Below, one piece after another: positions 163 through 64,000 of a stretch of 64,000 nucleotides of DNA (position 1 is the first letter of the stretch; the number at the start of each line of letters is the position of its first letter). Below the pieces are notes generated by a model, which saw nothing but the letters and a program-made list of their open reading frames with translations, was not told where the DNA came from and ran no database searches. Made by a program: the position numbers and the translations under genes. The DNA is taken from IMG/VR virus record IMGVR_UViG_3300017971_000001, positions 124,001 through 188,000 of that record. One strand, 5' to 3'.

Positions 163-753
163 TCATGCTCCACCCACTCCACGCTCGATCCGAACGCAGT
201 TCCACTTGATCGAGGTGCGGTCGGAAAACGGGTTCGAGACGAGCTCGCTTCGATACACCCCGTTGTTGTCGAGCACGAGGCACGAGGCACCCGATCGAAC
301 GTTGAGGGCGTCTCGCTCGGCCAGGGTCTTGACGACCATGAAGGGATAGCCGGGGGGAGACGAGGACAGGCGGGCAACCGCATGCCAGCGGTGATCTTCG
401 CCGTAGCGGAACACGCGGCGTTGCTGCTGGGCGTAGATCGTCAGACCCGGCTCGCGGATCTCGCGCGGGACCGTGTGCAAACTGTCCGCGTCCGCGACCT
501 CCCGAAAGAGCGCGCGGAGCGAGGTCAGCTGCTCCTCGCTCAACGACCTTCCCTCCTGGCGCAGCCAGTTGATCTTGTCCCAGACCCCAGGAATGCGCCC
601 GTCCTGCTGAATCGTCAAGACGGCCTCGAGCAAGCGGTCGATCACCTCGCCGCCGTCATTGAGGCGCAGCAGCGACCAGTAGAGCTCTTCGGTGGCCTCG
701 TAGTCGCCCTCCTTGGCGGCGCGCTCGAGTCGCCGAATTCGCTCGTCGCTCAC
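163..753 (-). CDS. Hypothetical protein with N-terminal DERxRxLER module
   Basis: GTG at 753 overlaps the upstream stop; begins MSDERIRRLERAAKEGDYEATEELYWSLLRL. Confidence 0.7.
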   Translation of the reverse strand: MSDERIRRLERAAKEGDYEATEELYWSLLRLNDGGEVIDRLLEAVLTIQQDGRIPGVWDKINWLRQEGRSLSEEQLTSLRALFREVADADSLHTVPREIREPGLTIYAQQQRRVFRYGEDHRWHAVARLSSSPPGYPFMVVKTLAERDALNVRSGASCLVLDNNGVYRSELVSNPFSDRTSIKWNCVRIERGVGGA

Positions 754-1304
754 AGCAAGAGGAACCGCTTGACCGCTTCCGCGGCCTTCGCCCCTAACTC
801 CTGAGGCGTTCCGTCGTTGACGAGGACTTCGTGCCAGGGGTAGTCCTCGGGGATCATGTGATCGAGGGCCTGGGTCGAAGGTGCGTCGGGGCGGACGATC
901 TTCAACAAGAGGCCGCCACGCTCGCGAATGGCCTCGGCTTCGTTCACTCCACGGACGTCGGTGAAGATACAGAGCCCCTTGTCGGGCAGATCGTCGAGGG
1001 CCTGATCGCGCCATACGTGCTCGTGAATCTCGCGCCCCTTGCCGCCAACTTCGATCATGAGCTCGAGCGGCGTCTTACCGATCCCGGGGAGCGGCTTGGA
1101 TCGCTCTTCTCTGTGCTGCTCGTAGTAGTCCGGCGGCTGCATGCCGTAGCACTTGAACATGAGGTAGGTGATGTACTTCAGGTCGTAGGCGAACTTGCGC
1201 ACCTCGACGCTGATCCAGGGGAGGTAGGCGCGGATCCCGCGCGCGGCGGTGTCCTTGCCTACCCCCGTCTGGTGCCCCATTCCGATCAGGACGAGCTTGG
1301 ACAC
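750..1304 (-). CDS. Deoxynucleoside monophosphate kinase (phage T4 gp1-like)
   Basis: N-terminal P-loop GHQTGVGKDT, FAYDLK, TDVRGVNEAEAI and C-terminal NDGT motifs. Confidence 0.85.
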   Translation of the reverse strand: MSKLVLIGMGHQTGVGKDTAARGIRAYLPWISVEVRKFAYDLKYITYLMFKCYGMQPPDYYEQHREERSKPLPGIGKTPLELMIEVGGKGREIHEHVWRDQALDDLPDKGLCIFTDVRGVNEAEAIRERGGLLLKIVRPDAPSTQALDHMIPEDYPWHEVLVNDGTPQELGAKAAEAVKRFLLL

Positions 1305-1305
1305 G

Positions 1306-1743
1306 CTACCGCCGGGGCGTCTTGGGGAGGACGTCCTTCTCGCAGCCAGCGACCCGCTTCTTGGCGGGGTTCGCGACCTCGCACATGTAGTGGTAGCTGT
1401 CGGGGTCGTAGTTGGAGTGCTTCTTGAGCGCCGTCGAGAAGACCCCGTCGTAGTTCTCCTCGCCGTCCTGGAAGTTGTCGTAGACCGCGATCACGTTGGC
1501 GAGCGTCTTGCCGCCCTGACCAGGAATCCAGATCTGGTCGCCGACCTTGTAGAGGGGCTTGGGCTTCACCGGGCGGATCGGCTTGGGGGGCTTCGGAGGG
1601 CTGACCGGCTTCGGCAGATCGGCGACGGTGGGCGTCTCGGCCGCAGGAGCAGGGGCGTCCGCCGGAGCAGGAGGGGAAGCGTCGATCACCTCGCCCTCGA
1701 TCTCCTCGGGGTCAATGGGGGTCGGATCGTTTTCGTTCGTCAT
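1306..1743 (-). CDS. Hypothetical protein, Pro-rich linker plus SH3/KOW-like domain
   Basis: Probable start MTNEND; YKVGDQIWI motif. Confidence 0.55.
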   Translation of the reverse strand: MTNENDPTPIDPEEIEGEVIDASPPAPADAPAPAAETPTVADLPKPVSPPKPPKPIRPVKPKPLYKVGDQIWIPGQGGKTLANVIAVYDNFQDGEENYDGVFSTALKKHSNYDPDSYHYMCEVANPAKKRVAGCEKDVLPKTPRR

Positions 1744-1751
1744 GACGGGTC

Positions 1752-2099
1752 CTAGCAGTTGAATGTGCAGCTGGCACGGTTGGCGTTCCAGAGCATGCAC
1801 TTCTCGCGCACGCAGGGAACCTTGATCGTATCCGCTACGAGCGGCGGATTTGGGTTTTCCTTGGTCGGCTGGGTCTTGGCGTTGTAGCCGAGACCACCCT
1901 GAACCTCGTAGACCGGGACCTCGCGCCCGCCCGCCTGGGGTAGCTGGAGCGCCGACTTGAGATCCGCTGTGTTCAGCTGGGGCCCCATTTGTGCCATGCC
2001 GACGGGAGTAACCCGCACGGCCAGGGTTCTGGGGATCAGCTGCATTCCGGTCATGAAGGGACAGACCTTGACGTCCTCGGACTGATTTTCCTGGGTCAC
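1752..2099 (-). CDS. Hypothetical protein with paired Cys motifs
   Basis: CPFM ... CVREKCMLW; GAGGA RBS upstream. Confidence 0.55.
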   Translation of the reverse strand: MTQENQSEDVKVCPFMTGMQLIPRTLAVRVTPVGMAQMGPQLNTADLKSALQLPQAGGREVPVYEVQGGLGYNAKTQPTKENPNPPLVADTIKVPCVREKCMLWNANRASCTFNC

Positions 2100-3996: not shown

Positions 3997-4068
3997 AGCG
4001 GGCGGCGGGGATCGAACCCGCGACGAACGGGTTGGAAACCCGACGCTCTACCGCTGAGCTACGCCCGC
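3997..4068 (-). tRNA. tRNA-Gly (TCC)
   Basis: GCGGGCG/CGCCCGC acceptor, GCTC/GAGC D arm, loop TT-TCC-AA, TTCGATC T loop, U discriminator; CCA not encoded. Confidence 0.93.
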
Positions 4069-4148
4069 GTTTTCAGCTGCGACACCCCACCCTCCGTGCC
4101 GCCTCACCCCGTGTCGACGAGGTCCCTGTATCTACCACTCCTGGTCAA

Positions 4149-4604: not shown

Positions 4605-5834
4605 TCACAACCCTAGATTTGCCAGGATCATGTTCAGCGCCGACTCGTTTTCGGCGGTCCCGACGAACACGTCCGGCTCGTCCGGGTTGAATGTCGTTCC
4701 CAAGTGGACCGAGTACGGCTCGGCGCCCTGGACCCACTCCTCGGAATCAGCCTGGTTCAACGCCATGCACCGGACGATCACAGCTACCTCCTCGTCCGGC
4801 CAGAGCGGGTTCCCCGCTTCGTCGAGCTCGAAGTTGATCCCGCTCGGATCCCACTCGATCCTCAGGTTCGGAGGCCTCCCGACGGGAAGCACAGCCGTCG
4901 CCCAAGGATCAAGGTTGCTGCTTTCGTCTTCGAACCCGAACTCTCGCAGGAGGTGGGGGAACGGAACCAAGGGCTGGTAGTCGAACCCATGAAGCGGGAG
5001 CACGCTGTGGTCGCGGCCGGGATCGGCCGTTCTCATGCTCGAGTCGACGTAGTCGACCGCTCGACGCTGATCGCGCTCGATAGGGATCCAGGCCCGATAG
5101 AACAGCGGCTGCATGATCTCCTGATAGGCGTAATCCGGATCCTCGTCGACCGCGAACCCCTCCTCGGTTGCGAGGTAGTCAACGAACCAGTTCACCGGAA
5201 ACAGAGCGCGTGGGTAGTGCCCCAGGTCCATGTGCCAGGCCATGACGCCCAGTAGGCGAGGTCCAGGCTCGACGAGCGCTCGGGCCGCGGCGAGCAGGTA
5301 TTCGACCTGATCTTCACCCCGGATCATGCGATTGACCGCGGGTGGCATGCGAAACTCGCCCTCACCGTATAGGTAAACCTTTCCACCGCGGCCGCCGAAG
5401 TTCCACGGCCTCCTTTCCGCAGGAAGATCGAGCCAGGAAGCGTCGAGGGTAGCGAAGCAGGCGACCTGGTCCTCCCCTTCGACGTCCGACCAATCCACCG
5501 GTCGATCGCTCAGCAAATCAGGCCAGCCGATCAGCAGCAGCGCGTCACCAGGCAACAACCTGCCGAGAATGAAGTTCGGGGCCTTGGGGTAGGGAACCAG
5601 GAACCAGTCCGAACCGAGCTCCTGAGCGGCGAGCACGAAAGGTTCGAAGGCCTCGTCGACCTGGCCCGCGCGCAGGAGCGCGGTGGCGTAGGCGAGCACG
5701 TCTTCGCTCGAGCCGGTCTCCTCGGCGCGGCGCTCAAGGTCTCGGAGGCGTCCTGCTGGGTTTCGCTTCACCGAATCGTGTCCGCTGCGCTCACGCCAGC
5801 GCCGGCCCTCGTCGCTGTTGCGTCGGTATCTCAT
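4605..5834 (-). CDS. NP/DER-module protein
   Basis: ATG 5834 overlaps the upstream TGA; KRNPAGRLRDLERRAEETGSSEDVLAYATALLRAG near the N-terminus. Confidence 0.7.
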   Translation of the reverse strand: MRYRRNSDEGRRWRERSGHDSVKRNPAGRLRDLERRAEETGSSEDVLAYATALLRAGQVDEAFEPFVLAAQELGSDWFLVPYPKAPNFILGRLLPGDALLLIGWPDLLSDRPVDWSDVEGEDQVACFATLDASWLDLPAERRPWNFGGRGGKVYLYGEGEFRMPPAVNRMIRGEDQVEYLLAAARALVEPGPRLLGVMAWHMDLGHYPRALFPVNWFVDYLATEEGFAVDEDPDYAYQEIMQPLFYRAWIPIERDQRRAVDYVDSSMRTADPGRDHSVLPLHGFDYQPLVPFPHLLREFGFEDESSNLDPWATAVLPVGRPPNLRIEWDPSGINFELDEAGNPLWPDEEVAVIVRCMALNQADSEEWVQGAEPYSVHLGTTFNPDEPDVFVGTAENESALNMILANLGL

Positions 5835-6325
5835 TCGAACTCCACGTCCCCCTGGAGTCGCCAGGTAGCACCGCAGTCCGAACACGAAAGGAGGTTTGTC
5901 CAACCTCCCGTAATGTCGTGGTCCTCGTAACCGATCGTCGCGCGGTCCTCGTAGATCGTAGGAGAGGAAACGATTCCGTAGTTGTTCTCGAGCGTAAAGT
6001 ATGTATCTCCGCTGGAGTGGTAGTAATCGGGGTCGTCTTCGTCTCGCCAAAACTGAAACGCGGCGTGACCCCTCGGGCAGACGAGGTTGTTCTCCCAGTC
6101 AGGGAACCAGTTTCCGTTGCGGCGCTCCCACCGAATGAGGTGCTCTTCGTCGCTGACGTAATTGGGCAGCGCGTCCATGACCGCCCGGTAAAGCGCGACC
6201 TGGTCTTCGAGCGAGAGCGCTTCGATCATGCCCTGCCGAAGCCGCAGCGCGATCAACGACGTCCGGGCGTCCAGGTCACCCTGGCCGGCGCGGCGCTCGA
6301 GCTCGCGGGCGCGCGGGTCAGTCAC
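5831..6325 (-). CDS. DER-module protein with C-terminal Cys motifs
   Basis: MTDPRARELERRAGQGDLDARTSLIALRLRQG; CPRGH and CSDC. Confidence 0.7.
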   Translation of the reverse strand: MTDPRARELERRAGQGDLDARTSLIALRLRQGMIEALSLEDQVALYRAVMDALPNYVSDEEHLIRWERRNGNWFPDWENNLVCPRGHAAFQFWRDEDDPDYYHSSGDTYFTLENNYGIVSSPTIYEDRATIGYEDHDITGGWTNLLSCSDCGATWRLQGDVEFE

Positions 6326-9057: not shown

Positions 9058-11136
9058 CTATCGGGACTTGCGCTTTTTCAGCGCGCCTCCTGCCAGCGCC
9101 GCGGCTCCCGCCGCCCCGGCCGCGGTTGCGACCGCCGTCGTGACGCAGACTGGGCAGGGGTTGCTGCGAACCCGCCGCTGAGCAAACGCGTGATCGCTCA
9201 AGGTCAGTTGATCGCTGGCAATCTCGCCGTCGGCCCACAGCGTGCTCAGCCACTCCCAGGCGAGATCGGCTTCGATCACTCGCTCGTAGTTGGGTTCGAG
9301 TCCGTTCTCGCCCCCGATCGCCGTTACGGTCGCCAGGTGATTGGCCGTTTGGATCGGCTCGCCCTCGTAGAGGCTCACGACGTAGTAGAAATCTTCGTAG
9401 TTCTCCATGTGCGACAGCGACCAGTCGTATTCAACCCCGAAGACCCAGCCCCTTTCTTCCGCCTCGCGCTCCGCCCAGGCCAGGTCGACCGCGTTGCGCA
9501 CACGGTGCTCGATCTGCTCAATCGCGTCCGCGCCAGCAGGGTGCGACCAGCCTGCCCACTCATACATGTATCGCTCGGCTTCGTTGAGGTTGAAGCGAGC
9601 GAGGACCGTCTCCTCAAGCTTGCCGTGAAGTTCAAGCAGGCGAATGTATTCCTCCTGCTCCTCGGGCGTGCGCTGCTTGCGCTCGAGCTCTCGGATCCGC
9701 TGGTCGCCGCGGGGTGGATTGAAGCCGATCCTCCTCCTGAGAATGGCCTGGCGAATCGACTCGATTCCGATCTTGTCCCAAGGCGACCCGCACCTGCCCT
9801 GCATGACGAACGCATGAAGTTCGTGAGGGGCGTAGTACCTCAGCAGCATGTCGGCTCGGAGCAATCGAGGCTCCTGGGCCTGTGAAGTCGGGGCGTCCCG
9901 CTCAAGGACGATCTGGCCGTCGCGGGTCAGAGCGCAATCAACAAGATCCTCGCTCATGACCTCAACGACTTCGAACTTTATTCCGTGAGCGTCCCCCAGG
10001 GCCTCAGCACATGCCAGCATTTTCGCGTTCTGGATCCGAGCTTCGATTCGAGCCATTTCACCGCGGCGGCGTTCGTCAAAAGCGGACCACCCGTAGCCAG
10101 ATCGCTCGTAGAAGTAACGCTCGGCAGGAGTGAGCGTCTGCGGGATCACGTGCTCCTCCAAGCGCCCGAGCTCGCCATGAAGTTCAAGCAGGCGAATGTA
10201 CTCTTCCTGCTCTTCCGGCGAGCGCTCGATCCGCTCGAGCTCGCGAATCCGCTCGTCCCCGCGAGGCGGGTTGAGCATGACGACGTCGTGCCCCTCGGCC
10301 GCCAACTCCCGCAGGAGTCGCTTCAGACTCGTGAGCGCGTTCTTCCAGGATCGCGGGTCACTGGCCGTCTTGGGAAAACCGATCGTCTTGCCCTTGATCT
10401 TGTAGATCAAGTGCTTCTTGCTGCGAACTAGCTTGGCGTCGTTCTGCTCGAGCAGCCACTTGACCTGGGAGAGCGCGTCACTGGAGCGCCCCTTCTTCTT
10501 GCCCTTCTTCCTCTTCTTCTTGGGATTCCTGCGCACGATCACGCTCCATTGCCGTTCGTTCAATCGCCCCAGGAACTGGTCCAGCGCGAGCTCGAGATCG
10601 TCGGTCGGGGCCGTGCTCCCGTAGCTCATGAGGCCCGGCGTCGCGTCCCGGACCGCCCAGCGCAGCGCAGACGGATCGCCCTGCTCGAGCCAGGCACGCA
10701 GCAACTCCTTGCGCCAGGGCTCGGCGCGCCGCTCGGCGAGCGTCCCCCAGAACGGGGTCAGCGAAATCGTATCAACGCGAAGGAAGTCCCCCGCCGCGGC
10801 CCGCGCCTGAGGCGTCGAGCGGGACAGGCGCCTTATGCGGGCCTCTACGTGATCCAGGAGCTCGTCGTCCAGAACGCGTTCGCCGGACGTAAAGGGCGAG
10901 GCGATCGGGTTGCTCATGACGCCCTCAAACAGAGGTCCTGGGCCCTCGTCTTCACGCGGGTCGTAGATCGGCGGAGGTTCAATTCCGACGCGATCTCGCT
11001 TCTGCTTGGCGTCGAGCCAACTCTGGTAGCTCTTCTCGAGCTCTTCGCGCCGGGCTCGCCGATCTTTGATCGCGCGAATGCGGGCGCGCTCTCGCTCGCT
11101 CGAGATCCACCAGGCCCAGTCTTCCCATTCGCTCAT
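9058..11136 (-). CDS. NP-delimited multi-module protein with HicA-like domain and two DER modules
   Basis: Start MSEWED; five NP motifs; duplicated NPPRGD(E/Q)RIRELER..PEEQEEYIRLLELHG; HicA-like segment ~10290-10490. Confidence 0.7.
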   Translation of the reverse strand: MSEWEDWAWWISSERERARIRAIKDRRARREELEKSYQSWLDAKQKRDRVGIEPPPIYDPREDEGPGPLFEGVMSNPIASPFTSGERVLDDELLDHVEARIRRLSRSTPQARAAAGDFLRVDTISLTPFWGTLAERRAEPWRKELLRAWLEQGDPSALRWAVRDATPGLMSYGSTAPTDDLELALDQFLGRLNERQWSVIVRRNPKKKRKKGKKKGRSSDALSQVKWLLEQNDAKLVRSKKHLIYKIKGKTIGFPKTASDPRSWKNALTSLKRLLRELAAEGHDVVMLNPPRGDERIRELERIERSPEEQEEYIRLLELHGELGRLEEHVIPQTLTPAERYFYERSGYGWSAFDERRRGEMARIEARIQNAKMLACAEALGDAHGIKFEVVEVMSEDLVDCALTRDGQIVLERDAPTSQAQEPRLLRADMLLRYYAPHELHAFVMQGRCGSPWDKIGIESIRQAILRRRIGFNPPRGDQRIRELERKQRTPEEQEEYIRLLELHGKLEETVLARFNLNEAERYMYEWAGWSHPAGADAIEQIEHRVRNAVDLAWAEREAEERGWVFGVEYDWSLSHMENYEDFYYVVSLYEGEPIQTANHLATVTAIGGENGLEPNYERVIEADLAWEWLSTLWADGEIASDQLTLSDHAFAQRRVRSNPCPVCVTTAVATAAGAAGAAALAGGALKKRKSR

Positions 11137-11143: not shown

Positions 11144-13975
11144 TCAGAACAAGTAGGCCTGGCGGGGATCGTCGAGCAGCCGGCCGCAGCGAACGATAAT
11201 GTTCGCCCCGAGTTTGCTGAGGTAGATCTCACCCCCCTCGTAGAGAGTGCGCAACGCCTCGGCCGCCTCAGCGCCCAGCCTACCCAGCACGAAGTGCTCG
11301 TGACCGAAAGCGTGAACCATGCGGCACCAGGTCCGCAGCAACGCTCGCAGTTCGTTCAGGTCCGAAAAGATCACGTCGTAGAGCACGAGCGACTTACCGA
11401 GCCGGGCGACCAGGCCCCCTCCGCGCTCGCTCGCGCCGCGCCCCCCAAAGCGACCGGCGACGATCGCGCCCGAGAACGGGTCCATGGGCAGGTAGCCGAT
11501 CTCGACAACCGACTCTTGCCCCCAGCCCGACCGCATGCTGATCTCGAGCCCGCTCTCTGCGTCGCGCCAGCTGTACTCCTTCGGATTCTCGACCGGCCGG
11601 AGCACATACTTCCGCCCTTCCTTGCCGAGCTCGGCACGCAAGGCGTCGAAGGAGCGATCGAAGACACGATCAGAGAACAGGACTGGAGGTGCCCCGGCGC
11701 TCAAGGACGCGTCGATCTGCTCCGGGGTCAGATCCGTCGATCGGTCGTTCGCCCGTCCCAAGGCGTCGACAAGGACCTCGCGCGACAAGGCGACGTTGCC
11801 CTCCAAGAGCTCGCGACGGACACCGGGAGCCATGCGGCGGAACGCCGTGACGAGCTCGGCGCGCAGGGCGTTGCTTCGGTCCTGCTTGGTCTCGCGCCGC
11901 TTCTTGGCACGCTTCTTGGTCTTGGCGCGCTTCTCCTCCAGGCGCTCGACGGCTCCGCCGCCCTCGTAGCGCTGCCGAGCGGCAGCGAGGAGTTCCTCGC
12001 CCCGCTTCTTCATGGACCCGCCGCTCGCCTTGTGCCAGTTGCCGGGCTTGCCCTTGAGCAACTCGTAGCTGCGCTTCTTGAACTTGATCCGCCGGTTGCC
12101 GTCGGGGTGGCGCAACCCGCCCCACTGATCGCGCGTCCAGCCTCGGCCCAGGTAGTAGGCAGAGATCAGATCGGCGCCCAGGTCCGTCGTGACCTTCTTC
12201 TTGCGGCCGGCAACCTTGAGCACTTCAGCGTCGCCGGGCTCGAGTCCGAGCGCTAGTCGAGCAACCTCGTCCTTGTTCGCAGCCTGAGTGAGCACGCGAC
12301 CCTTGTCGGCCTCACCGATCCGCAACCGCTCGCGCAGCAAGTTCGCCTCAGCCTCAGGCGTCGGCGATTCCTGGAACTCCCGTTCGGCGCGGGCAAAGCG
12401 ATCGTCGGGGTTCATTTGCCGGGGCGGCCCGGAACGCTGGTAAGGGCGAGGTGGCCAGTTGTCCGCAAACTCTTCGATCGAAGCCATGGCGTAATCGACG
12501 CTGGCCTTCGCTTCTTCGATATGGCCGTTTTCGATTTGGTGGACCGCGGAAACGACCGCGGACAGAGGCCCGCGCAGTTCTTCTTGGTGACCGCTTTGGA
12601 CGTAGAGGTCGTCCGTTCGACTCAAGAGCCTGCGGAGATCGGCGCCTGCGTACTGCGCGTACCGATCCGGATCGGTGTGCAGTCCCTCCCAAACGTCCAG
12701 GAGTCGATCAGAGAGGTTCTTAGCGATCCAGGCCTGGTAATCACTTCGGGCAGGATTTCCGCGCGCAGGCCAAACCGGGCGCCCGTCGCGCGGCGGCGGC
12801 TCGTGCAGGTAGGCCCACATGATCAATCCGAGGTGCTGGCGCGTCGGGATCCAAGCGCCTCGCTTCGCGCTCCACTCCCAAAACGGACGGCCGCTCTCTT
12901 CCATTTGGGTGACGTGCCGGGCAATGAACTCGCCGCGGCGATCCCACCAGGACGTCTTCGCTGTCGCCTTGCGCTTCTTGAGCGCTGACTTCTTTCCTTT
13001 GACCGCCTTGTAGGCCTGAAGGAATCCTTCGCCTGTGACCTTGCTGCTTCCCTTGCGAGCCACCTCGCTGACACCACGCTCCTCAGCCAACGGCTCCCAC
13101 TTCCTGACCTCGGCCAGGGAGAGGTAGGGACGAGCGGCGCCCCACCTCTTCGTACGGCTTGGGTTTGCCTTGACGAGCTTCCGAGCCGCTCCAGCCGCGT
13201 CCCTGGCAGCGCCAACGGCTCCCTCGCCTGCTTTGGTGATCGCGCCCTCGGCGAGGTCGGTCACAGGCTGGGTAATCCACTTGTCGATCCGGTTGGTCAC
13301 GAGCTCGGCAGCAGCACCCGAAGCCGTCCAGCCGATCAATTTGCCCACGAGCTCGGTCCCCGAAAGGCCGAACGGATTGTCTCGATAACGGCGCTGGAGC
13401 GTGCGCTCGTGCTCCGCCTCGTCGAAGTATGCGTCGATCGCGTCCTGGATCTCGCCCAGCGAGACCTCCGAGGGCTCCATGTCGGCACGCAGGTAGCCCA
13501 CGCGCTGCAACTCACGGGCGAGCTCGGTCAGCAGGCGCGCATATCGCTCTCCGCTCGAGGCGTGCAGCTGCCGGTAGAGCAAGCGCATGCGCTCGTCCCG
13601 GCTCGGGTTCCTCTTCGCCTTGGAGGGCTTGTCCTTGGGGGTCATTTCGTTTGCCTCGCGAACGAGCTCGGCGATCTCAGGGGGGTAGGGGACGCGTTGA
13701 CCCTTTTTGGCCTTGACCTTCTTCTTGACCTGCTTGAGCAAGATCGAGCGACCCTGCTTGGTCTTGTTGAGCTCTCTGATTGCGTGAATCGGCAGGCAGA
13801 GCGGCGGGCGATCGCCTGAGAGACGGGTGCCCTTCGCGCCGCACTTGTGCGACCAGTCCAGGTCCTTGTTGTATTGTCCCTTCTTCAGCGGCGTGCTGTC
13901 GCGATTCTTGCGCAGCAAGATCGAGCGCCAGTCTTGCTGGGTCCACTGCCACGACTGGTATCCAGGCGCTCCCAC
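11144..13975 (-). CDS. 943-aa NP-delimited multi-module protein
   Basis: KRNPSRDERMR, RDNPFG, KANPSR, RGNPAR and QMNPDDRF at composition boundaries. Confidence 0.7.
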   Translation of the reverse strand: MGAPGYQSWQWTQQDWRSILLRKNRDSTPLKKGQYNKDLDWSHKCGAKGTRLSGDRPPLCLPIHAIRELNKTKQGRSILLKQVKKKVKAKKGQRVPYPPEIAELVREANEMTPKDKPSKAKRNPSRDERMRLLYRQLHASSGERYARLLTELARELQRVGYLRADMEPSEVSLGEIQDAIDAYFDEAEHERTLQRRYRDNPFGLSGTELVGKLIGWTASGAAAELVTNRIDKWITQPVTDLAEGAITKAGEGAVGAARDAAGAARKLVKANPSRTKRWGAARPYLSLAEVRKWEPLAEERGVSEVARKGSSKVTGEGFLQAYKAVKGKKSALKKRKATAKTSWWDRRGEFIARHVTQMEESGRPFWEWSAKRGAWIPTRQHLGLIMWAYLHEPPPRDGRPVWPARGNPARSDYQAWIAKNLSDRLLDVWEGLHTDPDRYAQYAGADLRRLLSRTDDLYVQSGHQEELRGPLSAVVSAVHQIENGHIEEAKASVDYAMASIEEFADNWPPRPYQRSGPPRQMNPDDRFARAEREFQESPTPEAEANLLRERLRIGEADKGRVLTQAANKDEVARLALGLEPGDAEVLKVAGRKKKVTTDLGADLISAYYLGRGWTRDQWGGLRHPDGNRRIKFKKRSYELLKGKPGNWHKASGGSMKKRGEELLAAARQRYEGGGAVERLEEKRAKTKKRAKKRRETKQDRSNALRAELVTAFRRMAPGVRRELLEGNVALSREVLVDALGRANDRSTDLTPEQIDASLSAGAPPVLFSDRVFDRSFDALRAELGKEGRKYVLRPVENPKEYSWRDAESGLEISMRSGWGQESVVEIGYLPMDPFSGAIVAGRFGGRGASERGGGLVARLGKSLVLYDVIFSDLNELRALLRTWCRMVHAFGHEHFVLGRLGAEAAEALRTLYEGGEIYLSKLGANIIVRCGRLLDDPRQAYLF

Positions 13976-14397: not shown

Positions 14398-16637
14398 GAT
14401 CCCTCCACGGGGTCCGGAAGGCCGTCGAACGGATCCTCCTCCAGGCCGAAGAATCGCTGCATGAACGAACGGTGCTCGAGGGGAACGTGGTTCACGTTAT
14501 AGGGGTCATACTCTTCGACTCGAACCTGAAAGCTCCCAAGGCGGTATACCCAGCCAGGAACGAAGTCAGGGTCGACGCCGTATCCTCCAGAGTTCAGAGG
14601 CCACAGCCGGATTCCCCCCGCCCCGCCCCCTGGGAAGCGAAAGTCGACGTGCGGAATCAAAAAGACCGGAGGGCCCTCGTCTTCACCAGTGAAAGCGAAC
14701 TCGAAATAGACGCGGTCGACGACGACAACAGACCGGTCATTGTCAAGCCACTCTTCGGTCGTGTATCCATGACCGCTCGGAAAATTCCCCGCACGAAAAG
14801 CTCGGCGCGCCTGAACAGGCGACCAACGAAGCGTGATCTTCTCTCCGGGACTGGGCAGAAATCCGAGCTCCTGAAGGATCGCGAGGTCCTCCGCGAGCTC
14901 CCTGCTCGTCGGGATATCAAGTTCCCCCAAAGGACTGGCTCCCTCTGGAACGAAATGGTAGAGCGGGGGGCGTGGCTCGACCCCGCGACGGATACGCTCG
15001 ATCCGAGCGGCGATCGGATCGCGACCGCGCTCGAGCCGCCGCATGCGCTCGTCGGGGTTGTTGCGGACGCGCCCCGGCCAGTCAATTTCAATTTCTTCGC
15101 CAATACGTGGCGCCTTCCAGGCGCCGCCGGCCAGCCTAGCGTCTATGTAAAACCTCGAGCCGCTTACCTCAAAATAGATCGTAGGCCGAAGCCAGTCTCC
15201 AGGGACAACCTCGCAAGGGTCTGGAAATTCATACCTCAGGTCAGCGCACTTCGTGACCACTTCTCCGTTCAAACCGCGGGACCAACGAGGCCTAAACGAC
15301 GGATAGCCCAACGAGGGATCCCAGCTAATCCTGATCTCTGAATCGAACTGAGGAAGCAGGCCGAGCTCCTGCTGAATCGAAATGATCTCTTGGATCTCTT
15401 CCCGAGAGGGGATTCCGCCTCGGCCGAAAGCGTCTATGCCTGGGTAGCAGCGGCGGAGATCAACGTAACTCTCTTCCGCCGGGACGTTGTCGAACTTGAA
15501 CTCGAGCGGAGGCACCGGCTCGACCCCGCGGCGAATTCGCTCGATTCGGGCAGCGATCGGATCGTCGCTGCGCCCGAGTCGGCGCATGCGCTCGTCGGGG
15601 TTGCTGCGGACGCGTCGCTTGAGGTAAGACCGGTAGCTCTTGGTGGTCGGGCGGACGTGCCCGGTCGGGCAAGACCCGTCTTCGAGACAGGCTCCCAGGC
15701 CGACGTCGGTGATCTTGGTCGGCACGGGATCAAAGCGTGCCAGCGCGTCGTTCACCAGGCGGAGGTGGTGGCCCGGCAGCGCCAGGTAGACCTCCTGATA
15801 CTTGGGCGCGACCAGGCAGAACCAGTCCCCAATTCGATCGACGAGCTCAGCACGAGCCGCGCCGCGGAGGTGCTTGGGCGGGAAGTCGTAACCCGTCTGG
15901 GGGTATTCGCGCGACCATGCGTAGGGAACGATTCCGAGCGGCTCGCTGACCACGAACAGGTCGAGCTTCTTGCCCTTGAGCCCCTTGAGGTAGCCGTGCT
16001 TGTGGCTCGGCGCCTCAGGGAAGGGTTTGGTCCCAGCACAGGGGACGAGGACAGCCTTCTTGTGCTTCGGCTTGAAGCGGTGCGCCTTCTTACGGTTCTT
16101 GACGATCAGCGGGTGCTTGATCGCGCGCAGGCCCTGACGCGGCGAGCGGACGCGGAAGTAAGGCGGGTTCTTCCGGAACGACTGACGCGACTTGTAGACC
16201 ACGATCGGGATCATGTATCCGAACGCGCGCTCGAGGTCCACGTAGAGGTCGCCCTGTCGACTCCGGCGCCCCAGGTGTCGCAAACGGAGCTCCCCGGATT
16301 CACCTCCGAAGTCGAACAGGACGTCGATTACCTTGTAGCGCTCGCCGCGGCGATCGACCACGAACACGTCAGCCGTCCCGGCTCCGGCCGCGGCCAGAAG
16401 ATCCTCCCAGGTGTTGGGGTTGGTGATCCCCATGACCGGTCCGACGGTCAGCATGCTCTGCAGCGCCTGGGTGATCGCCGGCTTCTCGTAGGTCCCCTCA
16501 GGCTGATAGATCAGCGGCGCCTCGCCCGAAGCGAGGTCGGCAAAGACGAGGCCGCGAGGCGGAGTCGTCATGGTCTTGGGTGCCGGCATGGGCAGGAACG
16601 CCTCGGCGGACGCCGGCAGGAGCGGCTCTTCGCTCAC
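14394..16637 (-). CDS. NP-delimited multi-module protein with DUF5591/ArcS-TGT-associated-like domain and two DER modules
   Basis: LVPCAGTKPF..APSH, VVSEPLGIVP, YP..GYDFP; duplicated NPDERMRRL...DPIAARIERIRRGVEP. Confidence 0.7.
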   Translation of the reverse strand: MSEEPLLPASAEAFLPMPAPKTMTTPPRGLVFADLASGEAPLIYQPEGTYEKPAITQALQSMLTVGPVMGITNPNTWEDLLAAAGAGTADVFVVDRRGERYKVIDVLFDFGGESGELRLRHLGRRSRQGDLYVDLERAFGYMIPIVVYKSRQSFRKNPPYFRVRSPRQGLRAIKHPLIVKNRKKAHRFKPKHKKAVLVPCAGTKPFPEAPSHKHGYLKGLKGKKLDLFVVSEPLGIVPYAWSREYPQTGYDFPPKHLRGAARAELVDRIGDWFCLVAPKYQEVYLALPGHHLRLVNDALARFDPVPTKITDVGLGACLEDGSCPTGHVRPTTKSYRSYLKRRVRSNPDERMRRLGRSDDPIAARIERIRRGVEPVPPLEFKFDNVPAEESYVDLRRCYPGIDAFGRGGIPSREEIQEIISIQQELGLLPQFDSEIRISWDPSLGYPSFRPRWSRGLNGEVVTKCADLRYEFPDPCEVVPGDWLRPTIYFEVSGSRFYIDARLAGGAWKAPRIGEEIEIDWPGRVRNNPDERMRRLERGRDPIAARIERIRRGVEPRPPLYHFVPEGASPLGELDIPTSRELAEDLAILQELGFLPSPGEKITLRWSPVQARRAFRAGNFPSGHGYTTEEWLDNDRSVVVVDRVYFEFAFTGEDEGPPVFLIPHVDFRFPGGGAGGIRLWPLNSGGYGVDPDFVPGWVYRLGSFQVRVEEYDPYNVNHVPLEHRSFMQRFFGLEEDPFDGLPDPVEGS

Positions 16638-18046
16638 CCTTCACCTCGCAGGTAGCGCGTCAGGAGACCGTCGTCTCCGTAGAGGAGGTCCATACAGAAA
16701 GAGTCAAAGGCCTCCGAGTCCAATTCAAGGCGAACCAGAAAGTCGGCTTCATACGCGTCGCCGGCCGGGTGAACCTCCAAGAAGCCAACGACGCCATGCG
16801 CGCGATCGGCCAAGAGGTCCCAGTAGCCCTCGCGGCTCAGGTGCCCTTCGAGGAACTCGAGCCATATGTCCCACGGCCCAAGCGGCTCCTCGAGCGGAAG
16901 ATCCCACTCAGAACGGAAGGCCGCGGCCGCGGCCGCAATGTCCCCCTGCTTGACCTCCACGAAAGGACTCAAAACGTCCAACAAGAGATTACGAAGCGAA
17001 GCAAGAGGGCTCAGCATTCCGGAGATCTCTTCGTAGTAAAGAGACTCCCCTTCGCTCCGAGACTCCCTTGAATAGACGGCAAGATAGGGCGCGACGCCGT
17101 AGCCGCTCACGCTTGGCCCGAGGGACGGCCAGTCTACGAAGAGACGAGCGTCCTCTCGCTGCGCTTCGTCCCGCGCGTTCTCGACCAACCACTCGGACAG
17201 CGCGCCGACGACCCCCAATCTCGCCGCCTGCAGCCGGCGCTCCAGGCGCTCAGCAGGAATCTCGCGGCCAGCTTGCGACTCGCGCGAAATGTCGTAGCAG
17301 AACAAAGCGACGAACGCCCAGAGCGGCGGGCCAGACAAGTTGTCGACATAGGTCTGCTCGGCCAGCGTGCCGTCGAAGAGCAGTCGGAACGCGTCGTCGT
17401 CCAAGTCCTCGAGCAAAACGAATTCCGCTCGCTGACGGGGCGTCGCGTGGCACCCGCGGTCGACCAGGACCTTTGGGGCCGCCAACAGCCCGAGCAGGTA
17501 GGCGTCCGCCGGGTGGATCACGCCCCGACGTGTTGCCTCACGCGTGTACCGCTCCCAGGCCTCTTGGGTGTTGTCTTCTTGAGCGCGCCTCAGAACTTCG
17601 CGCAGGCGCTCGCGACGGGGGTTCAGCGCCACCTGGAGTCCCTTTGCACGCTTGGTGCTGGGCCAGCGCAGGTCGTAACCGATCTTGACGCCCGTGACTG
17701 CCGACCCCGCTCGATCCGCCCCCGGCTCGTCCGCCTCAGGGTCGGCGACGTGACCGATCTCGTGCGCGAACAGCGCCTTGCGGTTCTTCCTGGGCAGCCA
17801 GCGCGTCTGCTCGGCGAGTTCGAAGATCGGTGGCTCTTCTCCGACGCGAACCTGGGCGTAACGGCGCGCGTTCTCCTCATGCGTCTGCGTGAGCTCTCGC
17901 GGCCAACGGAGCACGAAGGGCCCCTTGAAGCCCGCCTTGCGGTAGAGGGCCTCATACTCCCTGCGGATCTGATCGCGCGATACAGGCCGCTTGAGCTTTG
18001 GGTGCTTATGTCTCCGGCAGAACTCTCGGCCGCTGGACCTGCTCAT
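16634..18046 (-). CDS. HExxH zincin-like domain, NP junction, DER-module domain
   Basis: LFAHEIGHV..E..AD; then ALNPRRERLREVLRRAQEDNTQEAWERYTREATRRG. Confidence 0.65.
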   Translation of the reverse strand: MSRSSGREFCRRHKHPKLKRPVSRDQIRREYEALYRKAGFKGPFVLRWPRELTQTHEENARRYAQVRVGEEPPIFELAEQTRWLPRKNRKALFAHEIGHVADPEADEPGADRAGSAVTGVKIGYDLRWPSTKRAKGLQVALNPRRERLREVLRRAQEDNTQEAWERYTREATRRGVIHPADAYLLGLLAAPKVLVDRGCHATPRQRAEFVLLEDLDDDAFRLLFDGTLAEQTYVDNLSGPPLWAFVALFCYDISRESQAGREIPAERLERRLQAARLGVVGALSEWLVENARDEAQREDARLFVDWPSLGPSVSGYGVAPYLAVYSRESRSEGESLYYEEISGMLSPLASLRNLLLDVLSPFVEVKQGDIAAAAAAFRSEWDLPLEEPLGPWDIWLEFLEGHLSREGYWDLLADRAHGVVGFLEVHPAGDAYEADFLVRLELDSEAFDSFCMDLLYGDDGLLTRYLRGEG

Positions 18047-61613: not shown

Positions 61614-61688
61614 CCGCCAGTAGCTCAGTTGGTAGAGCGTCGCGTCTAAGCAGCGCGAAGGTCAAGGGTTCGAGTCCCTTCCGGCGGA
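61614..61688 (+). tRNA. tRNA-like gene with enlarged anticodon loop, directly before the array
   Basis: Canonical D and T arms; TCGCG-TCTAAGCAG-CGCGA; one acceptor mismatch. Confidence 0.7.
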
Positions 61689-61692
61689 ACAC

Positions 61693-62690
61693 GAGCGAGT
61701 CCAGCAGACCGACCCGAACAGAGATCACGAGCGAGCCGACGAGCAAGACACGAACAGCGACTTCGAGCGAGCCGCTACCGACGACACGAGCATGGTATGC
61801 GAACGAGCAATGAGTTCGAATTCGATCGAAGGTGAAGAGCGAGTCGACTTTGCGGAATCGACCGTAGCAGATCAACGAGCCACCAGGTAAGAACCGACCC
61901 TAAGCAGCGAACGAGCCGCTAGAAGCGAATCGATCATGGCGAGCTAGCGAGCCATTGCCCCAGACACGAGCACCAAGGATAAGCGAGCTAAGGAACTCCG
62001 AGTCGAACATAGCCCATGAGCGAGCCCCTCATGCAGACACGATCAGAGATCGGGACCGAGCGCTCTGCGACGACACGATCAAAGCCCGCGACCGACCGAA
62101 TCTTGAGGTGAGAATCGATCCAGCATTGCGAGTGAGCCATGGACCGGGAAACGAGAAGCAAGCACAAGCGAGTCTCAGAACACGATCCGAACAACGACGA
62201 GGAACGAGCCTTAGCGCTCGACGCGAACGTCAAGAACAAGCGAGCCTCAGATCCACGACCTGACCGAAGAGGTAAAGCGAACCATGCGCCGGGAATCGAT
62301 CGCTACGAACAAGTGATCCGTAGCCTTCGAATCGAACGAAGAGAACGTGAGAGCCCCAGTTAGGGACCCGATCTAGACGAACGAGCGAGCCTTAATGTCC
62401 GACACGAGCAGCAGGAGCGGGAGCGAGTCCTGGTAGTCGAACCGACCAGACAGCCACGAACGAGCCTTTCACGTCGACGCGAGCATAGACGTGGATCGAG
62501 TCCTCAGCACAACGAATCGAGCATGGCGGAAGAGCGAGCCCTCGGCGTCGAAATGATTCATGAATCAAGAGCGAGTCGAACCCGATAACTCGAGCAGGGT
62601 TCCCGACCGAGCAGCCACTATCACCTAGACAAGATCGTGAAGAAGGAGCGAGCCTAAGCTCTGGACTTCAGCGTGACCGACAAGCGAGCC
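61693..62690 (+). repeat. Dual-repeat ~36-nt array, TIGR-like guide RNA array (27 units plus terminal repeat)
   Basis: Unit = GAGCGAGCC-N9-GA(C/A)NCGANC-N9 with nearly all spacers different. Confidence 0.85.
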
Positions 62691-62725
62691 CGCCCGCCGG
62701 ACCCCGGCAGGCGGGCTTCTTTTTT
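62687..62725 (+). terminator. Rho-independent terminator closing the array
   Basis: AGCCCGCCCGCCGG-ACC-CCGGCAGGCGGGCT-TCTTTTTT. Confidence 0.85.
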
Positions 62726-62739
62726 GCGAGAATGAAACC

Positions 62740-63813
62740 ATGACCTACCGAATCAATGCCCGCGGTGACCGCGGGCGGCGCGAGCTCGAGCGGGCAGGCG
62801 ACGTCGAGGCTCAGGCTTCCGCGCTGAACGAGCGCCGTAGGACCGGAGAGATCAGCGAGGGTGCCCTCTCTGCGCTCGTAGACCTTGGCTACGAACCTGC
62901 GTCCCTGCTCGTTGGTCGCGAAGGTGGAACGGCGCCGATCTACCGCTGGTCGAGCTTGCGCTACCCCGACCGTGAGATCTTCGACGTCGAGCGCCGGATC
63001 CATGACTACGGGAAGAAGGTGATCGCTCACTTCGCCTTCGAGTCGATCGCAACGTTGATCGGCCTGGCGAATCAGCGCGGAATGCTGGTCCACGACAGCA
63101 ACCGAGACACCGAGCTCTTCAAGTCTGGCATGCGCGCGGTCCCCTTCGGTGAGATCGGTGTCGACGAGATCGTGGTCGAATACGGACTCGCGCCGCTGGC
63201 CTATATCGACCTCTGCGCCGAGGTGCTCGAGGACCCGTCCACCATGCTTCCCAACGCAGCTGAGATTCGAGAGATCGAGACCCAACTGCGCGATATGCAG
63301 GCCCAAGAGGAAGAGGGTCGCCAGGTCGACGACGAGATCAACGAGCTCGAGGGCCGCCTCTACTACGCCCAGAACCCAGGTCAGTACGCCCGGGACATGA
63401 GGGACGCGGCTCACGTTGCCTCTGAGCACGCTCGCGACGAAGCCGAAGGGGCCGCTTTTCATTTCTCGGATCAGAGCTTGTCGCTTCCGCTGCTCTGGTA
63501 CGCGCTGGCGGAGGCGTGTGCCTCGCTGATCGATATCTTCTTCGGGTTTCGAATGCTGGAAGGAGAGAGTTTCTCGTTCACCCAGTCCGGCACGACCTAC
63601 CTGCCCAACGAGGACCTCAGCCCACGCAGTCTGCTCGAGGTCATGGCGAACTGCGCCTACGGCTACGGCTACACGAACGACCCTACGAACTTTCACCGTC
63701 CGTTCGGGGTTGCGATCGGCGGTTTCGACAGCATGTCCAAGCACTTCTGGCCGAGATTCGTCTCGGACTTTTCTCCGGACATGATCGAAACCATTCTTGA
63801 GGAGGGGTTGTGA
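62740..63813 (+). CDS. DER-module protein
   Basis: INARGDRGRRELERAGDVEAQASALNERRRTGEISEGALSALVDLGYEPA. Confidence 0.7.
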   Translation: MTYRINARGDRGRRELERAGDVEAQASALNERRRTGEISEGALSALVDLGYEPASLLVGREGGTAPIYRWSSLRYPDREIFDVERRIHDYGKKVIAHFAFESIATLIGLANQRGMLVHDSNRDTELFKSGMRAVPFGEIGVDEIVVEYGLAPLAYIDLCAEVLEDPSTMLPNAAEIREIETQLRDMQAQEEEGRQVDDEINELEGRLYYAQNPGQYARDMRDAAHVASEHARDEAEGAAFHFSDQSLSLPLLWYALAEACASLIDIFFGFRMLEGESFSFTQSGTTYLPNEDLSPRSLLEVMANCAYGYGYTNDPTNFHRPFGVAIGGFDSMSKHFWPRFVSDFSPDMIETILEEGL

Positions 63814-64000
63814 GCGACCGGAGGGAGAGGCAGGCAGAGCGGGTAGGGGACGAGGTCGGTCGACTCAAGGCCCTGCACCGCCGCGGCGTCCTGCCGTTCT
63901 GGAAGCTCGAACTCCTCGCCTGGCTCGACTATGAGCCTGCGAAGGAACTGGCAGAAGCGCCGGGCGAAGTGCGACTCCTCGACGCGGCGGACCTCGTCGC
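63810..64000 (+). CDS. DER-module protein, truncated by the window end
   Basis: GGAGG RBS, GTGA overlap; MSDRRERQAERVGDEVGRLKALHRRGVLPFWKLELLAWLDYEPA. Confidence 0.65.
   Translation, partial: MSDRRERQAERVGDEVGRLKALHRRGVLPFWKLELLAWLDYEPAKELAEAPGEVRLLDAADLV

What the first reader, a model, noticed from the sequence alone, without database searches (positions are those of the whole stretch)
163..64000. Shared ~35-50 aa helical 'DERxRxLER' module on about a dozen unrelated proteins
Seen: consensus roughly S-D-E-R-(I/L/M)-R-x-L-E-R...(G/S)D/P-E-A...L..R.R.G...L..LG. It is N-terminal in ORFs starting at 753, 6325, 35003, 46587 (divergent), 49003, 62740 and 63810. It follows NP in 4605-5834, 9058-11136 (x2), 11144-13975 (x2), 14394-16637 (x2) and 16634-18046. 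Downstream domains are unrelated. Inference: a portable addressing or docking tag, for capsid loading, an export or chaperone pathway, or host mimicry. I recall similar N-termini in hypothetical proteins of uncultured Planctomycetota, but that is unverified.
Basis: partly seen in the sequence, partly recalled or inferred. Interest (0 to 1): 0.8.

Follow-up and report, generated by a model that had tools for sequence, protein, structure and literature searches.

The report
New portable helical header domain
A short helical protein module with no name in current databases really is attached to about a dozen unrelated proteins of this huge phage, and to well over a thousand protein families of Planctomycetota bacteria and phage-like elements; it is most likely a docking handle, but its partner is unknown.

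Summary
Four more score 12-14 bits, about the maximum seen in a 20-fold shuffled control (14.3). The 'divergent' copy at 46587 is not supported.

The module is a two-helix core (D-E-R-h-R-x-L-E-R-x-A-x-x-G-D-x-E-A...R-x-G), often extended by two short helices (L..RLELAAyLGh..A). No Pfam, NCBIfam, PADLOC or PDB entry matches it. A full search of 1.84 billion representative proteins gives 1,645 hits.

In Planctomycetota MAGs it sits at the extreme N-terminus of many small paralogues. Some lie tail-to-tail with RHS toxin genes or carry Imm5-like domains. In phage-like contigs it recurs up to seven times within one protein, each copy preceded by a basic R-R-N-P motif, and the payloads between copies are unrelated.

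Codon third positions vary freely, so selection acts on the protein. The best reading is a non-catalytic docking or adaptor header shared by host and phage. That function is inferred, not shown. Capsid loading or export is not supported. It is a new domain family of a familiar kind, with an unexplained R-R-N-P boundary motif.

The parts
583..750 (-). Module copy at the N-terminus of gene 163-753 (VSDERIRRLERAAKEGDYEAT...)
   Evidence: 32.4 bits with the external-only HMM; 25.5 bits in leave-one-out
5592..5759 (-). Module copy in gene 4605-5834, after KRNP. It is preceded by a degenerate half-copy, MRYRRNSDEGRRWRER
   Evidence: 39.1 bits; sequence
6155..6322 (-). Module copy at the N-terminus of gene 5831-6325 (VTDPRARELERRAGQGDLDA...)
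   Evidence: 30.2 bits
9541..9708 (-). Module copy b in gene 9058-11136, after FNPPRG
   Evidence: 14.4 bits, borderline; NP context; 37% identical repeat of copy a's payload
10093..10260 (-). Module copy a in gene 9058-11136, after LNPPRG
   Evidence: 12.2 bits, borderline; exact DERIRELER core
12242..12409 (-). Module copy b in gene 11144-13975, after RQMNP; long four-helix form
   Evidence: 32.8 bits
13433..13600 (-). Module copy a in gene 11144-13975, after KRNPSR; divergent
   Evidence: 12.8 bits, borderline
14889..15056 (-). Module copy b in gene 14394-16637, after VRNNP
   Evidence: 22.3 bits
15432..15599 (-). Module copy a in gene 14394-16637, after VRSNP
   Evidence: 18.4 bits
17453..17620 (-). 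Module copy in gene 16634-18046, after QVALNP
   Evidence: 18.3 bits; 16.8 bits in leave-one-out
17621..18046 (-). HExxH (AHEIGH) domain directly upstream of the module. Two other module proteins (P0067, P0113) share this architecture, and in all three the domain ends ...GLQVxxN|P
   Evidence: only a weak Peptidase_M48 match, E 0.22. A candidate zincin peptidase, not shown to be one
34833..35000 (-). Module copy at the N-terminus of gene 34638-35003
   Evidence: 31.4 bits
49006..49173 (+). Module copy (long four-helix form) at the N-terminus of gene 49003-49704. The whole protein belongs to the roughly 220-residue Planctomycetota family
   Evidence: 41.5 bits; alignment A5; AF2 model with pLDDT above 93 over residues 1-52
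62764..62931 (+). Module copy near the N-terminus of gene 62740-63813, after the leader MTYRINARG
   Evidence: 41.4 bits
63813..63980 (+). Module copy at the N-terminus of the gene starting at 63810, which runs off the window
   Evidence: 14.3 bits, borderline
46587..46700 (+). Claimed 'divergent' copy; not a member
   Evidence: -2.1 bits at the claimed site; absent

Best explanation
The DERxRxLER element is a genuine autonomous protein domain that no current database names.

Structure. The core is a helix-loop-helix of about 35 residues. Helix 1 is D-E-R-h-R-x-L-E-R-x-A. The loop is G-D/S-x. Helix 2 is E-A-x-x-x-L-x-x-x-x-x-R-x-G. Two short extra helices (L..RLELAAyLGh..A) often bring it to about 57 residues.

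Distribution. It is greatly expanded in uncultured Planctomycetota. There it always heads small cytoplasmic proteins whose C-terminal parts vary. A subset look like immunity proteins of RHS toxins. It is also common in large phage-like contigs, including this 245-kb one. In those contigs it heads small proteins or is repeated inside multi-domain proteins in front of unrelated payload domains. Each internal copy is preceded by a basic R-R-N-P motif.

Most likely mechanism (inferred). It is a non-catalytic protein-protein docking header. It couples many different payload domains to one common partner, or to each other, in the way effector-associated or Death-like adaptor domains do. The phage copies let phage payloads plug into, or compete for, the same host partner.

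Shown here: the domain is real, portable, conserved at the protein level and spread across host and phage. Inferred: binding, the identity of the partner, and the direction of host-phage transfer.
For: - Independent external HMM recognises the window copies.
- 1,645 representative proteins match at E<=1e-3. Some carry up to 7 copies, and many proteins of 200-250 residues have the module at residues 2-57.
- 61 loci with the RRWKETG subtype lie almost only in Planctomycetota MAGs, with at least 18 copies in one MAG and some tandem arrays.
- More copies occur in this genome outside the window and in other viral contigs.
- Payloads are unrelated: only 4 of 168 same-protein payload pairs are similar, and in the window only the two internal repeats are.
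- Partner domains are diverse: Imm5_like, GNAT, GGACT, FHA, DUF5591, L5 gp82, GP88.
- Third codon positions are far less conserved than positions 1+2: 0.44-0.46 against 0.61-0.65 in the MAGs, and 0.43 against 0.58 in the window. Selection therefore acts on the protein.
- AF2 gives a confident helical module, pLDDT 91-97.
- Copies within one protein are more alike than copies in different proteins (49% against 42%; 0 of 500 permutations reach this), although their payloads differ.
- The arrangement matches the published 'EAD principle': terminal, non-catalytic, several copies per genome, diverse fusion partners (PMC8195603).
Against: - No partner or hub protein carrying the module was found.
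- No NTPase or other core component of a conflict system appears among the best 150 hits.
- PADLOC gives nothing.
- The within-genome excess of similarity in the MAGs is small, 0.65 against 0.61.
- The higher similarity within a protein could simply reflect local duplication.
- In the roughly 220-residue bacterial family the module may be an integral part of one helical fold rather than a separate tag; the o49003 model has pTM 0.77.
- Nothing here measures binding.
Confidence: 0.5

Rival explanations
1. Processing signal. The R-R-N-P motif plus the module marks unit boundaries in phage polyproteins. Cleavage at or next to Asn-Pro would release payloads that each begin P-D-E-R. That would mimic the free S-D-E-R N-terminus of the stand-alone proteins. 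The cut could be made by the HExxH domain of gene 16634-18046, by another peptidase, or by Asn-driven self-cleavage. The module would then work only as a free N-terminal header.
For: - 164 of 169 internal copies have an Asn within 8 residues upstream. The next residue is Pro in 137, position N-2 is Arg in 96 and N-1 is Arg in 62.
- NP is 3.4-fold enriched in multi-module proteins (297 against 87 expected). 132 NP sites are not followed by a detectable module, though several of those listed are degenerate copies below threshold.
- In the window's four large proteins there are 18 NP against about 5 expected, at apparent domain boundaries.
- Stand-alone copies start at residues 1-4 in 79 of 121 N-terminal cases. 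Another 34 have only a short basic leader ending in Asn.
- An HExxH domain ending ...QVxxN|P is conserved in three module proteins.
Against: - No cleavage data exist.
- The HExxH domain has no significant family match (Peptidase_M48 E 0.22; PDB search negative).
- N-P-D-E is also a textbook helix N-cap, so the motif may be purely structural.
- Pro at P1' is unfavourable for most peptidases.
- The spacing between NP and the Asp varies by 0-3 residues.
Confidence: 0.2
2. Structural cap only. The hairpin is a stable, generic helical-repeat element resembling TPR or Sel1 repeats. It nucleates or caps the fold of variable helical immunity-type proteins, and phage proteins reuse it as a rigid spacer between domains. 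There is no common binding partner.
For: - The weak structural neighbours include several TPR, Sel1-repeat and designed helical-repeat proteins.
- In o49003 the module is modelled as part of one compact protein.
- Many small relatives share downstream consensus features as well (W...R..A.A, and a C-terminal PWALG).
Against: - The charged residues D2, R4, R6, E9, R10 and the R-x-G are nearly invariant across thousands of otherwise unrelated proteins. A mere spacer would not need that.
- The module precedes unrelated payloads; the o49003 model has beta strands after it.
- No Sel1 or TPR model matches, even at E<=10.
Confidence: 0.2
3. Capsid-loading or export tag. The module directs proteins into the phage head or through a secretion route.
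For: It sits at the N-terminus of unrelated phage proteins, as T4-type capsid targeting sequences do. The multi-domain proteins resemble the polyvalent proteins thought to be delivered with phage DNA.
Against: - Many host chromosomal genes scattered among housekeeping genes carry the same module.
- There is no hydrophobic signal-peptide core: the module starts at residue 2 and is highly charged.
- The copies lie beside replication genes rather than structural genes.
Confidence: 0.07
4. Chance similarity of Arg/Glu-rich helices, or a conserved DNA or RNA element that is merely translated.
For: The composition is biased. In leave-one-out tests using window copies only, 6 of 11 proteins scored below the shuffled maximum.
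Against: - The external-only HMM gives 18-41 bits for 10 copies, against 14.3 at most in 20-fold shuffles.
- 1,645 database hits share the same register and the same position in the protein.
- Third codon positions diverge freely.
Confidence: 0.01

Closest known systems
Effector-associated domains (EADs) and bacterial Death-like domains of prokaryotic conflict systems (Kaur, Burroughs, Iyer, Aravind 2020/2021; PMC8195603)
   Same: Small, non-catalytic and helical. Strongly biased to protein termini. Fused to many unrelated enzymatic or signalling domains, including FHA, peptidase-like and acetyltransferase domains. Several copies per genome and per locus. Copies that sit together are somewhat more alike.
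   Different: No sequence match to any Pfam model. No copy was found on an NTPase, vWA-MoxR or other core component. It is reiterated within single phage proteins. It has 2-4 helices, not the six-helix Death fold.
Sel1-like and TPR helical-hairpin repeats
   Same: Antiparallel helix pairs joined by G-D-x-E-A-type loops. The weak structural neighbours include several Sel1 or TPR proteins such as 6deh, 6orc, 3rjv, 4bwr and 4r7s.
   Different: No Sel1 or TPR profile match, even at E<=10. The best Z is only 3.8, which is within noise. It usually occurs as a single copy at the extreme N-terminus rather than in a solenoid array. Its invariant charged motif, D-E-R-x-R-x-L-E-R, is distinct.
Imm5 / Imm5_like immunity proteins of polymorphic toxin systems (Zhang et al. 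2012, PMC3482391)
   Same: 8 of 66 small relatives carry Imm5_like or Imm5 downstream of the module. About 10 of 61 MAG loci place the gene end-to-end with an RHS toxin gene whose C-terminus varies. Tandem arrays recall polyimmunity loci.
   Different: The module itself is not covered by the Imm5 models. Most relatives, and all window proteins, have no Imm5 match. The genes converge tail-to-tail with the toxin gene rather than following it. Most loci have ordinary housekeeping neighbours.
Polyvalent proteins of phages and conjugative elements (Iyer et al. 2017; recalled from my own knowledge, not read here)
   Same: Very large phage-encoded polypeptides that string together unrelated accessory domains, some with a peptidase-like domain.
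   Different: Here every unit is introduced by the same R-R-N-P plus helical module, a regular punctuation I am not aware of in polyvalent proteins. Delivery with the DNA is untested.
Capsid targeting sequences of T4 internal proteins, and propeptides of phiKZ inner-body proteins (from my own knowledge)
   Same: A shared N-terminal element on otherwise unrelated phage proteins.
   Different: Those are short, phage-specific and removed by the prohead protease. This module is a folded domain of 35-57 residues that is also abundant in host chromosomes.

Membership tests
Effector-associated domains (EAD1-12, bDLD) | Small non-catalytic, mostly helical domain | tested here: met
   AF2 models show helices at 2-12, 16-28, 34-42 and 46-52, with pLDDT 91-97. 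No catalytic motif is conserved.
Effector-associated domains (EAD1-12, bDLD) | Terminal position, fused to diverse effector or signalling domains, several copies per genome or locus | tested here: met
   121 of 285 copies are N-terminal. Partners include Imm5_like, GNAT, GGACT, FHA and DUF5591. One MAG has at least 18 copies, and tandem arrays occur.
Effector-associated domains (EAD1-12, bDLD) | The same domain is also present on the core component (STAND NTPase, VMAP, iSTAND and the like) that recruits the effectors | tested here: inconclusive
   None was seen among the best 150 of 1,645 hits or in the fetched loci. The remaining hits were not inspected.
Effector-associated domains (EAD1-12, bDLD) | Sequence-profile membership in a described EAD or Death-like family | tested here: not met
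   No Pfam family of any kind matched the module in the window proteins, in 126 relatives, or in isolated modules at E<=10. That Pfam holds EAD models is my recollection. No HHpred-type comparison was possible.
Sel1-like / TPR repeats | Match to Sel1 or TPR sequence profiles | tested here: not met
   No hit at E<=10 on ten isolated modules.
Sel1-like / TPR repeats | Helix-turn-helix hairpins that stack as in TPR or SLR structures | tested here: inconclusive
   Best VIA-align Z is 3.8. Several SLR and TPR chains appear at Z 2.7-3.2, which is within noise for helical models. Foldseek gave nothing significant.
Imm5 / Imm5_like immunity proteins | Match to PF14423 or PF21805 | tested here: not met
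   No window protein matches. Only 8 of 66 small relatives match. Where in those proteins the match lies was not resolved; isolated modules give no Imm5 hit.
Imm5 / Imm5_like immunity proteins | Encoded next to a polymorphic toxin gene | tested here: inconclusive
   About 10 of 61 MAG loci abut an RHS-repeat gene tail-to-tail. Other neighbours are housekeeping genes. No toxin gene is seen beside the phage copies.
Phage polyvalent proteins | One large phage polypeptide combining several unrelated accessory domains | tested here: met
   Genes 9058-11136, 11144-13975 and 14394-16637 hold two modules each with distinct payloads. Relatives hold up to 7. Payload pairs are unrelated in 164 of 168 cases.
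Phage polyvalent proteins | Packaged in the virion and delivered with the DNA; processed by an embedded peptidase | not testable with these tools
   Only an HExxH motif domain is present, with no significant peptidase family match.
Capsid targeting sequence / prohead-protease propeptide | Phage-specific N-terminal peptide, removed on head maturation | tested here: not met
   The module is abundant in host chromosomal genes. Cleavage and virion location cannot be tested here.
2A-like skipping peptides / asparagine peptide lyases | D(V/I)ExNPGP motif for 2A peptides; a structurally activated Asn at P1 for the lyases | tested here: not met
   The motif here is [RK][RK]-N-P followed by D/G/S. NPGP occurs only now and then, and the upstream D-x-E is missing. 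Self-cleavage itself cannot be tested here.
Sec/Tat signal peptides | N-terminal hydrophobic core (Sec) or twin-arginine motif followed by a hydrophobic core (Tat) | tested here: not met
   The sequences are charged amphipathic helices from residue 2 onward.

The most novel reading that the evidence does not exclude
These dsDNA phages may encode true polyproteins. R-R-N|P would be a processing site, cut either by Asn-driven self-cleavage or by the conserved HExxH domain. Cleavage would release many different payloads, each with a free P-D-E-R helical header. That header would mimic the S-D-E-R N-terminus of many host proteins, so the payloads could occupy or jam a host hub to which the host's own module proteins dock. 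This would be a phage counterpart of viral polyprotein processing combined with Death-fold decoys such as vFLIPs.
Probability: 0.1. Interest if true: 0.85.

Novelty: new member of a known kind. Interest (0 to 1): 0.6.

Why it matters
- It defines a large protein-domain family with no annotation: 1,645 representative clusters, none covered by Pfam, NCBIfam, PADLOC or PDB. The family links a poorly known bacterial phylum to its huge phages. It therefore gives a sequence marker for assigning such phages to Planctomycetota hosts.
- If the module is an adaptor, the many host paralogues and the phage proteins that copy it outline an unexplored interaction network. That network may relate to toxin immunity or to phage-host conflict. 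The module could serve as bait to find its hub.
- The regular R-R-N-P punctuation of multi-payload phage proteins is unexplained. It may point to polyprotein processing, which would be unusual for a tailed phage.

Tried and rejected
- **Chance or low complexity.** Rejected by the external-only HMM against shuffles.
- **DNA-level repeat or recombination handle.** Rejected. Third codon positions and the 60 nt upstream are not conserved.
- **Pfam DUF3375 (JetA-like) hit on copy 16637b.** E 1.6e-5, 24.4 bits, below the 28.6-bit cut-off. It covers one 33-residue stretch in one copy only, so I treat it as a chance similarity between Arg/Glu helices.
- **Whole-protein fold searches of o49003.** PDB and AFDB clusters gave nothing significant. 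The one exception was a 62-residue match to a module-bearing FHA protein, A0A356KU01.
- **Module-only fold searches.** No match above noise.
- **Word-indexed searches.** With o49003 and with P0003 residues 885-950, they found only the query and one close relative.
- **Literature searches for sequence strings.** Nothing relevant.
- **Kinase genes near the MAG copies.** Seen in 10 loci, but kinases are probably abundant in these genomes, so I did not count this as an association.
- **Partial 16.8-bit hit at 36027-36617.** It lacks helix 1, so I did not count it.
- **Megablast of 10 kb of the window against INPHARED phages.** No match.

Full report
**What the window is.** The window is 63% G+C. 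It is part of IMGVR_UViG_3300017971_000001, a 245,276-bp viral contig. It carries phage-type replication and recombination genes:
- an SNF2 helicase and a UvrD helicase, each interrupted by a LAGLIDADG intein;
- an Erf-like annealing protein;
- a PD-(D/E)XK exonuclease;
- a primase-like protein.

A partial contig from another sample, L003, is a close relative (85% identity in the protein compared). Its annotation adds RusA, an Fe/Mn superoxide dismutase and AEP-TOTE. No match was found in the INPHARED phage collection.

**Checking the observation.** Window copies alone give a mixed result. In a leave-one-protein-out HMM test, 5 of 11 proteins scored above the best score from a 20-fold shuffled ORF set.

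The decisive test came from outside the genome. I built a profile from 225 copies found in other genomes, leaving out anything 60% or more identical to this genome. It scores ten window copies at 18-41 bits and four at 12-14 bits. The shuffled maximum is 14.3 bits. The 'divergent' copy at 46587 scores -2.1 bits and should be dropped.

Downstream segments show no BLASTP similarity to one another, apart from the two internal repeats within 9058-11136 and within 14394-16637.

**How widespread the module is.** A degenerate DNA pattern for DER-h-R-x-LER found six matches in this contig. No other viral contig had more than two. The translated context showed:
- further copies in this genome outside the window (L020, L023, L050);
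- several copies in an unrelated 81.8-kb viral contig (L038, L047), again after Asn-Pro;
- an N-terminal copy in a third viral contig (L049).

A 20-sequence profile was then searched against 1.84 billion representative proteins. It returned 1,645 proteins at E<=1e-3 and 38 at E<=1e-10. Two classes stand out among the hits:
- Proteins of about 200-250 residues with the module at residues 2-57. The consensus is MSDERLRELERRWKETGSxEDEAAYLxERVRxGDLxxERLELAAYCGHxxA.
- Proteins of 400-1,500 residues with two to seven copies.

A scan of one genome per species with the first subtype gave 61 confirmed loci. Nearly all are in Planctomycetota MAGs, with many paralogues per genome and some tandem arrays. 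The multi-copy proteins whose context I examined lie in dense, mostly one-directional, ORFan-rich, phage-like contigs, and adjacent genes also carry copies.

**Whether it matches anything characterised.** It does not.
- Pfam, NCBIfam and PADLOC give no family over the module. This holds for the window proteins, for 126 relatives, and for isolated modules at E<=10.
- A 96-sequence profile finds no solved structure. Its best 'hit', at E 0.36, is a de novo designed helical repeat.
- AlphaFold2 models are confident: pLDDT 91-97 over the module, with helices at 2-12, 16-28, 34-42 and 46-52.
- Fold searches give nothing above noise. The weak neighbours include several TPR and Sel1-type hairpins.

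**Anatomy.** The core is D-E-R-h-R-x-L-E-R-x-A-x-x-G-D-x-E-A-x-x-x-L-x-x-x-x-x-R-x-G. D2, R4, R6, E9, R10 and the R-x-G are nearly invariant. Third codon positions are much less conserved than positions 1+2, both among MAG paralogues and among window copies. The 60 nt upstream are not conserved. The constraint is therefore on the protein, not on a DNA or RNA element.

**The Asn-Pro motif.**
- Among 169 internal copies in the best hits, 164 have an Asn within eight residues upstream. It is followed by Pro in 137. Arg occupies position -2 in 96 and position -1 in 62.
- In multi-module proteins NP occurs 297 times against 87 expected. 132 of these are not followed by a detectable module, although several of those listed are degenerate copies below threshold.
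- In the window's four large proteins there are 18 NP against about 5 expected.
- Of 121 N-terminal copies, 79 start at residues 1-4 and 34 have only a short basic leader ending in Asn, such as MSYHRN-PDD or MRRN-PDE.
- None of the MAG copies listed has such a leader. They follow the start codon directly.

**Context in the host.**
- In about 10 of 61 MAG loci the module gene lies tail-to-tail with an RHS-repeat gene. The 3' ends fall within about -50 to +10 nt of each other, and the C-terminal 150 residues of the RHS proteins differ from locus to locus. One of them is DUF3990.
- Eight of 66 small relatives carry Imm5_like or Imm5. A subset therefore look like immunity proteins of polymorphic toxins.
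- Other convergent neighbours are ordinary genes: a radical SAM enzyme, a sigma-54 activator, an enoyl-CoA hydratase and kinases.
- Gene 49003-49704 aligns with the small bacterial family along its whole length, including a C-terminal VPVLLG that corresponds to the family's PWALG. This suggests exchange between host and phage.

**Portability.** Within multi-module proteins only 4 of 168 pairs of payload segments are detectably similar. The modules in one protein, however, are more alike (49%) than modules in different proteins (42%; 0 of 500 permutations reach this). Recognisable payload domains include GNAT, GGACT, FHA, DUF5591 (ArcS-like), mycobacteriophage L5 gp82 and GP88.

Gene 16634-18046 begins with a 142-residue HExxH (AHEIGH) domain. 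Two other module proteins share this domain, and in all three it ends ...GLQVxxN|P directly before the module. Its assignment as a peptidase rests on the motif alone.

**Interpretation.** The best-supported reading is a non-catalytic docking or adaptor header that couples variable payloads to a common partner or to each other. This is the arrangement described as the 'EAD principle' for prokaryotic conflict systems (PMC8195603). The phage copies would give access to, or compete for, the same host partner.

This is an analogy of function, not membership. No described EAD profile matches, and no hub protein bearing the module was found.

The main rivals are these:
- The R-R-N-P motif plus module marks processing sites in phage polyproteins. 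This is attractive because stand-alone copies need the module at the very N-terminus.
- The module is a purely structural helical cap.

None of these functions can be tested with sequence tools. The experiments that would decide between them are listed under next steps.

**Novelty.** The family appears to be undescribed, and it is large. As a kind, a small portable helical adaptor, it is familiar. The regular R-R-N-P punctuation of multi-payload phage proteins is the unusual and unexplained part.

Noticed in passing
window 4146-4557 (-): A complete tmRNA gene (Rfam RF00023, 149 bits). ARAGORN reads the tag peptide as ADQKAHLPTATSRA. It lies just downstream of the module-gene cluster and next to a tRNA-Gly. 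tmRNAs have been reported in huge phages (PMC7162821 came up in the search but I did not read it).
   Followed up: partly
window 3997-4068 (-) and 61614-61688 (+): tRNA-Gly(TCC) and tRNA-Leu(AAG) genes.
   Followed up: no
window 19401-22787 (-) and 43223-46627 (+): Both large helicases, SNF2-type and UvrD-type, are interrupted by inteins with LAGLIDADG homing-endonuclease domains. The UvrD orthologue in the related contig L003 is only 737 residues, so it appears to lack the intein.
   Followed up: partly
window 16634-18046 (-), residues 1-142: A conserved HExxH (AHEIGH) domain with no significant family match. It recurs in front of the module in P0067 and P0113 and may be a zincin peptidase.
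   Followed up: partly
window 14394-16637 (-), residues about 160-275: A DUF5591 / archaeosine-synthase (ArcS) alpha-like domain (Pfam E 2.9e-10, NCBIfam E 2e-9). It hints at a 7-deazaguanine-type nucleic-acid modification function fused to two module-payload units.
   Followed up: no
window 9058-11136 (-): After RRNP comes a lysine-rich run, KKKRKKGKKKG. After the last RSNP the protein ends in a Cys-rich stretch, then a hydrophobic Ala/Gly stretch, then KKRKSR. This looks like a tail-anchor or membrane segment.
   Followed up: no
window, many genes (e.g. starts at 753, 1304, 7046, 31973, 35003, 49003, 63810): Unusually many genes start with GTG followed by a Ser codon (V-S-...). The start often overlaps the stop of the upstream gene by 4 nt, which suggests tight translational coupling.
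   Followed up: no
window 41665-42252 (+): The orthologous gene in the related contig L003 (2252-2839) carries Fe/Mn superoxide dismutase domains. A phage-encoded SOD is therefore likely here. I did not scan the window gene itself.
   Followed up: no
window 52675-53496 (-): A lone minus-strand gene in a plus-strand block. It encodes a vWA-domain protein with a signal-peptide-like N-terminus, MRRLILPLLLLVAAPALA. A vWA gene also lies near the module cluster in the phage-like contig L066.
   Followed up: no
L119 (JAGVZE010000016.1, labelled Candidatus Woesearchaeota): One module-bearing gene of the Planctomycetota subtype sits on a 94-kb contig binned as an archaeon. This could be a mis-binned contig or a mobile element.
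   Followed up: no
L069, L071, L112 and other MAG loci: RHS-repeat toxin genes of Planctomycetota MAGs converge tail-to-tail on the module genes, sometimes with overlapping 3' ends. This is unusual for toxin-immunity pairs, which normally lie head-to-tail.
   Followed up: partly
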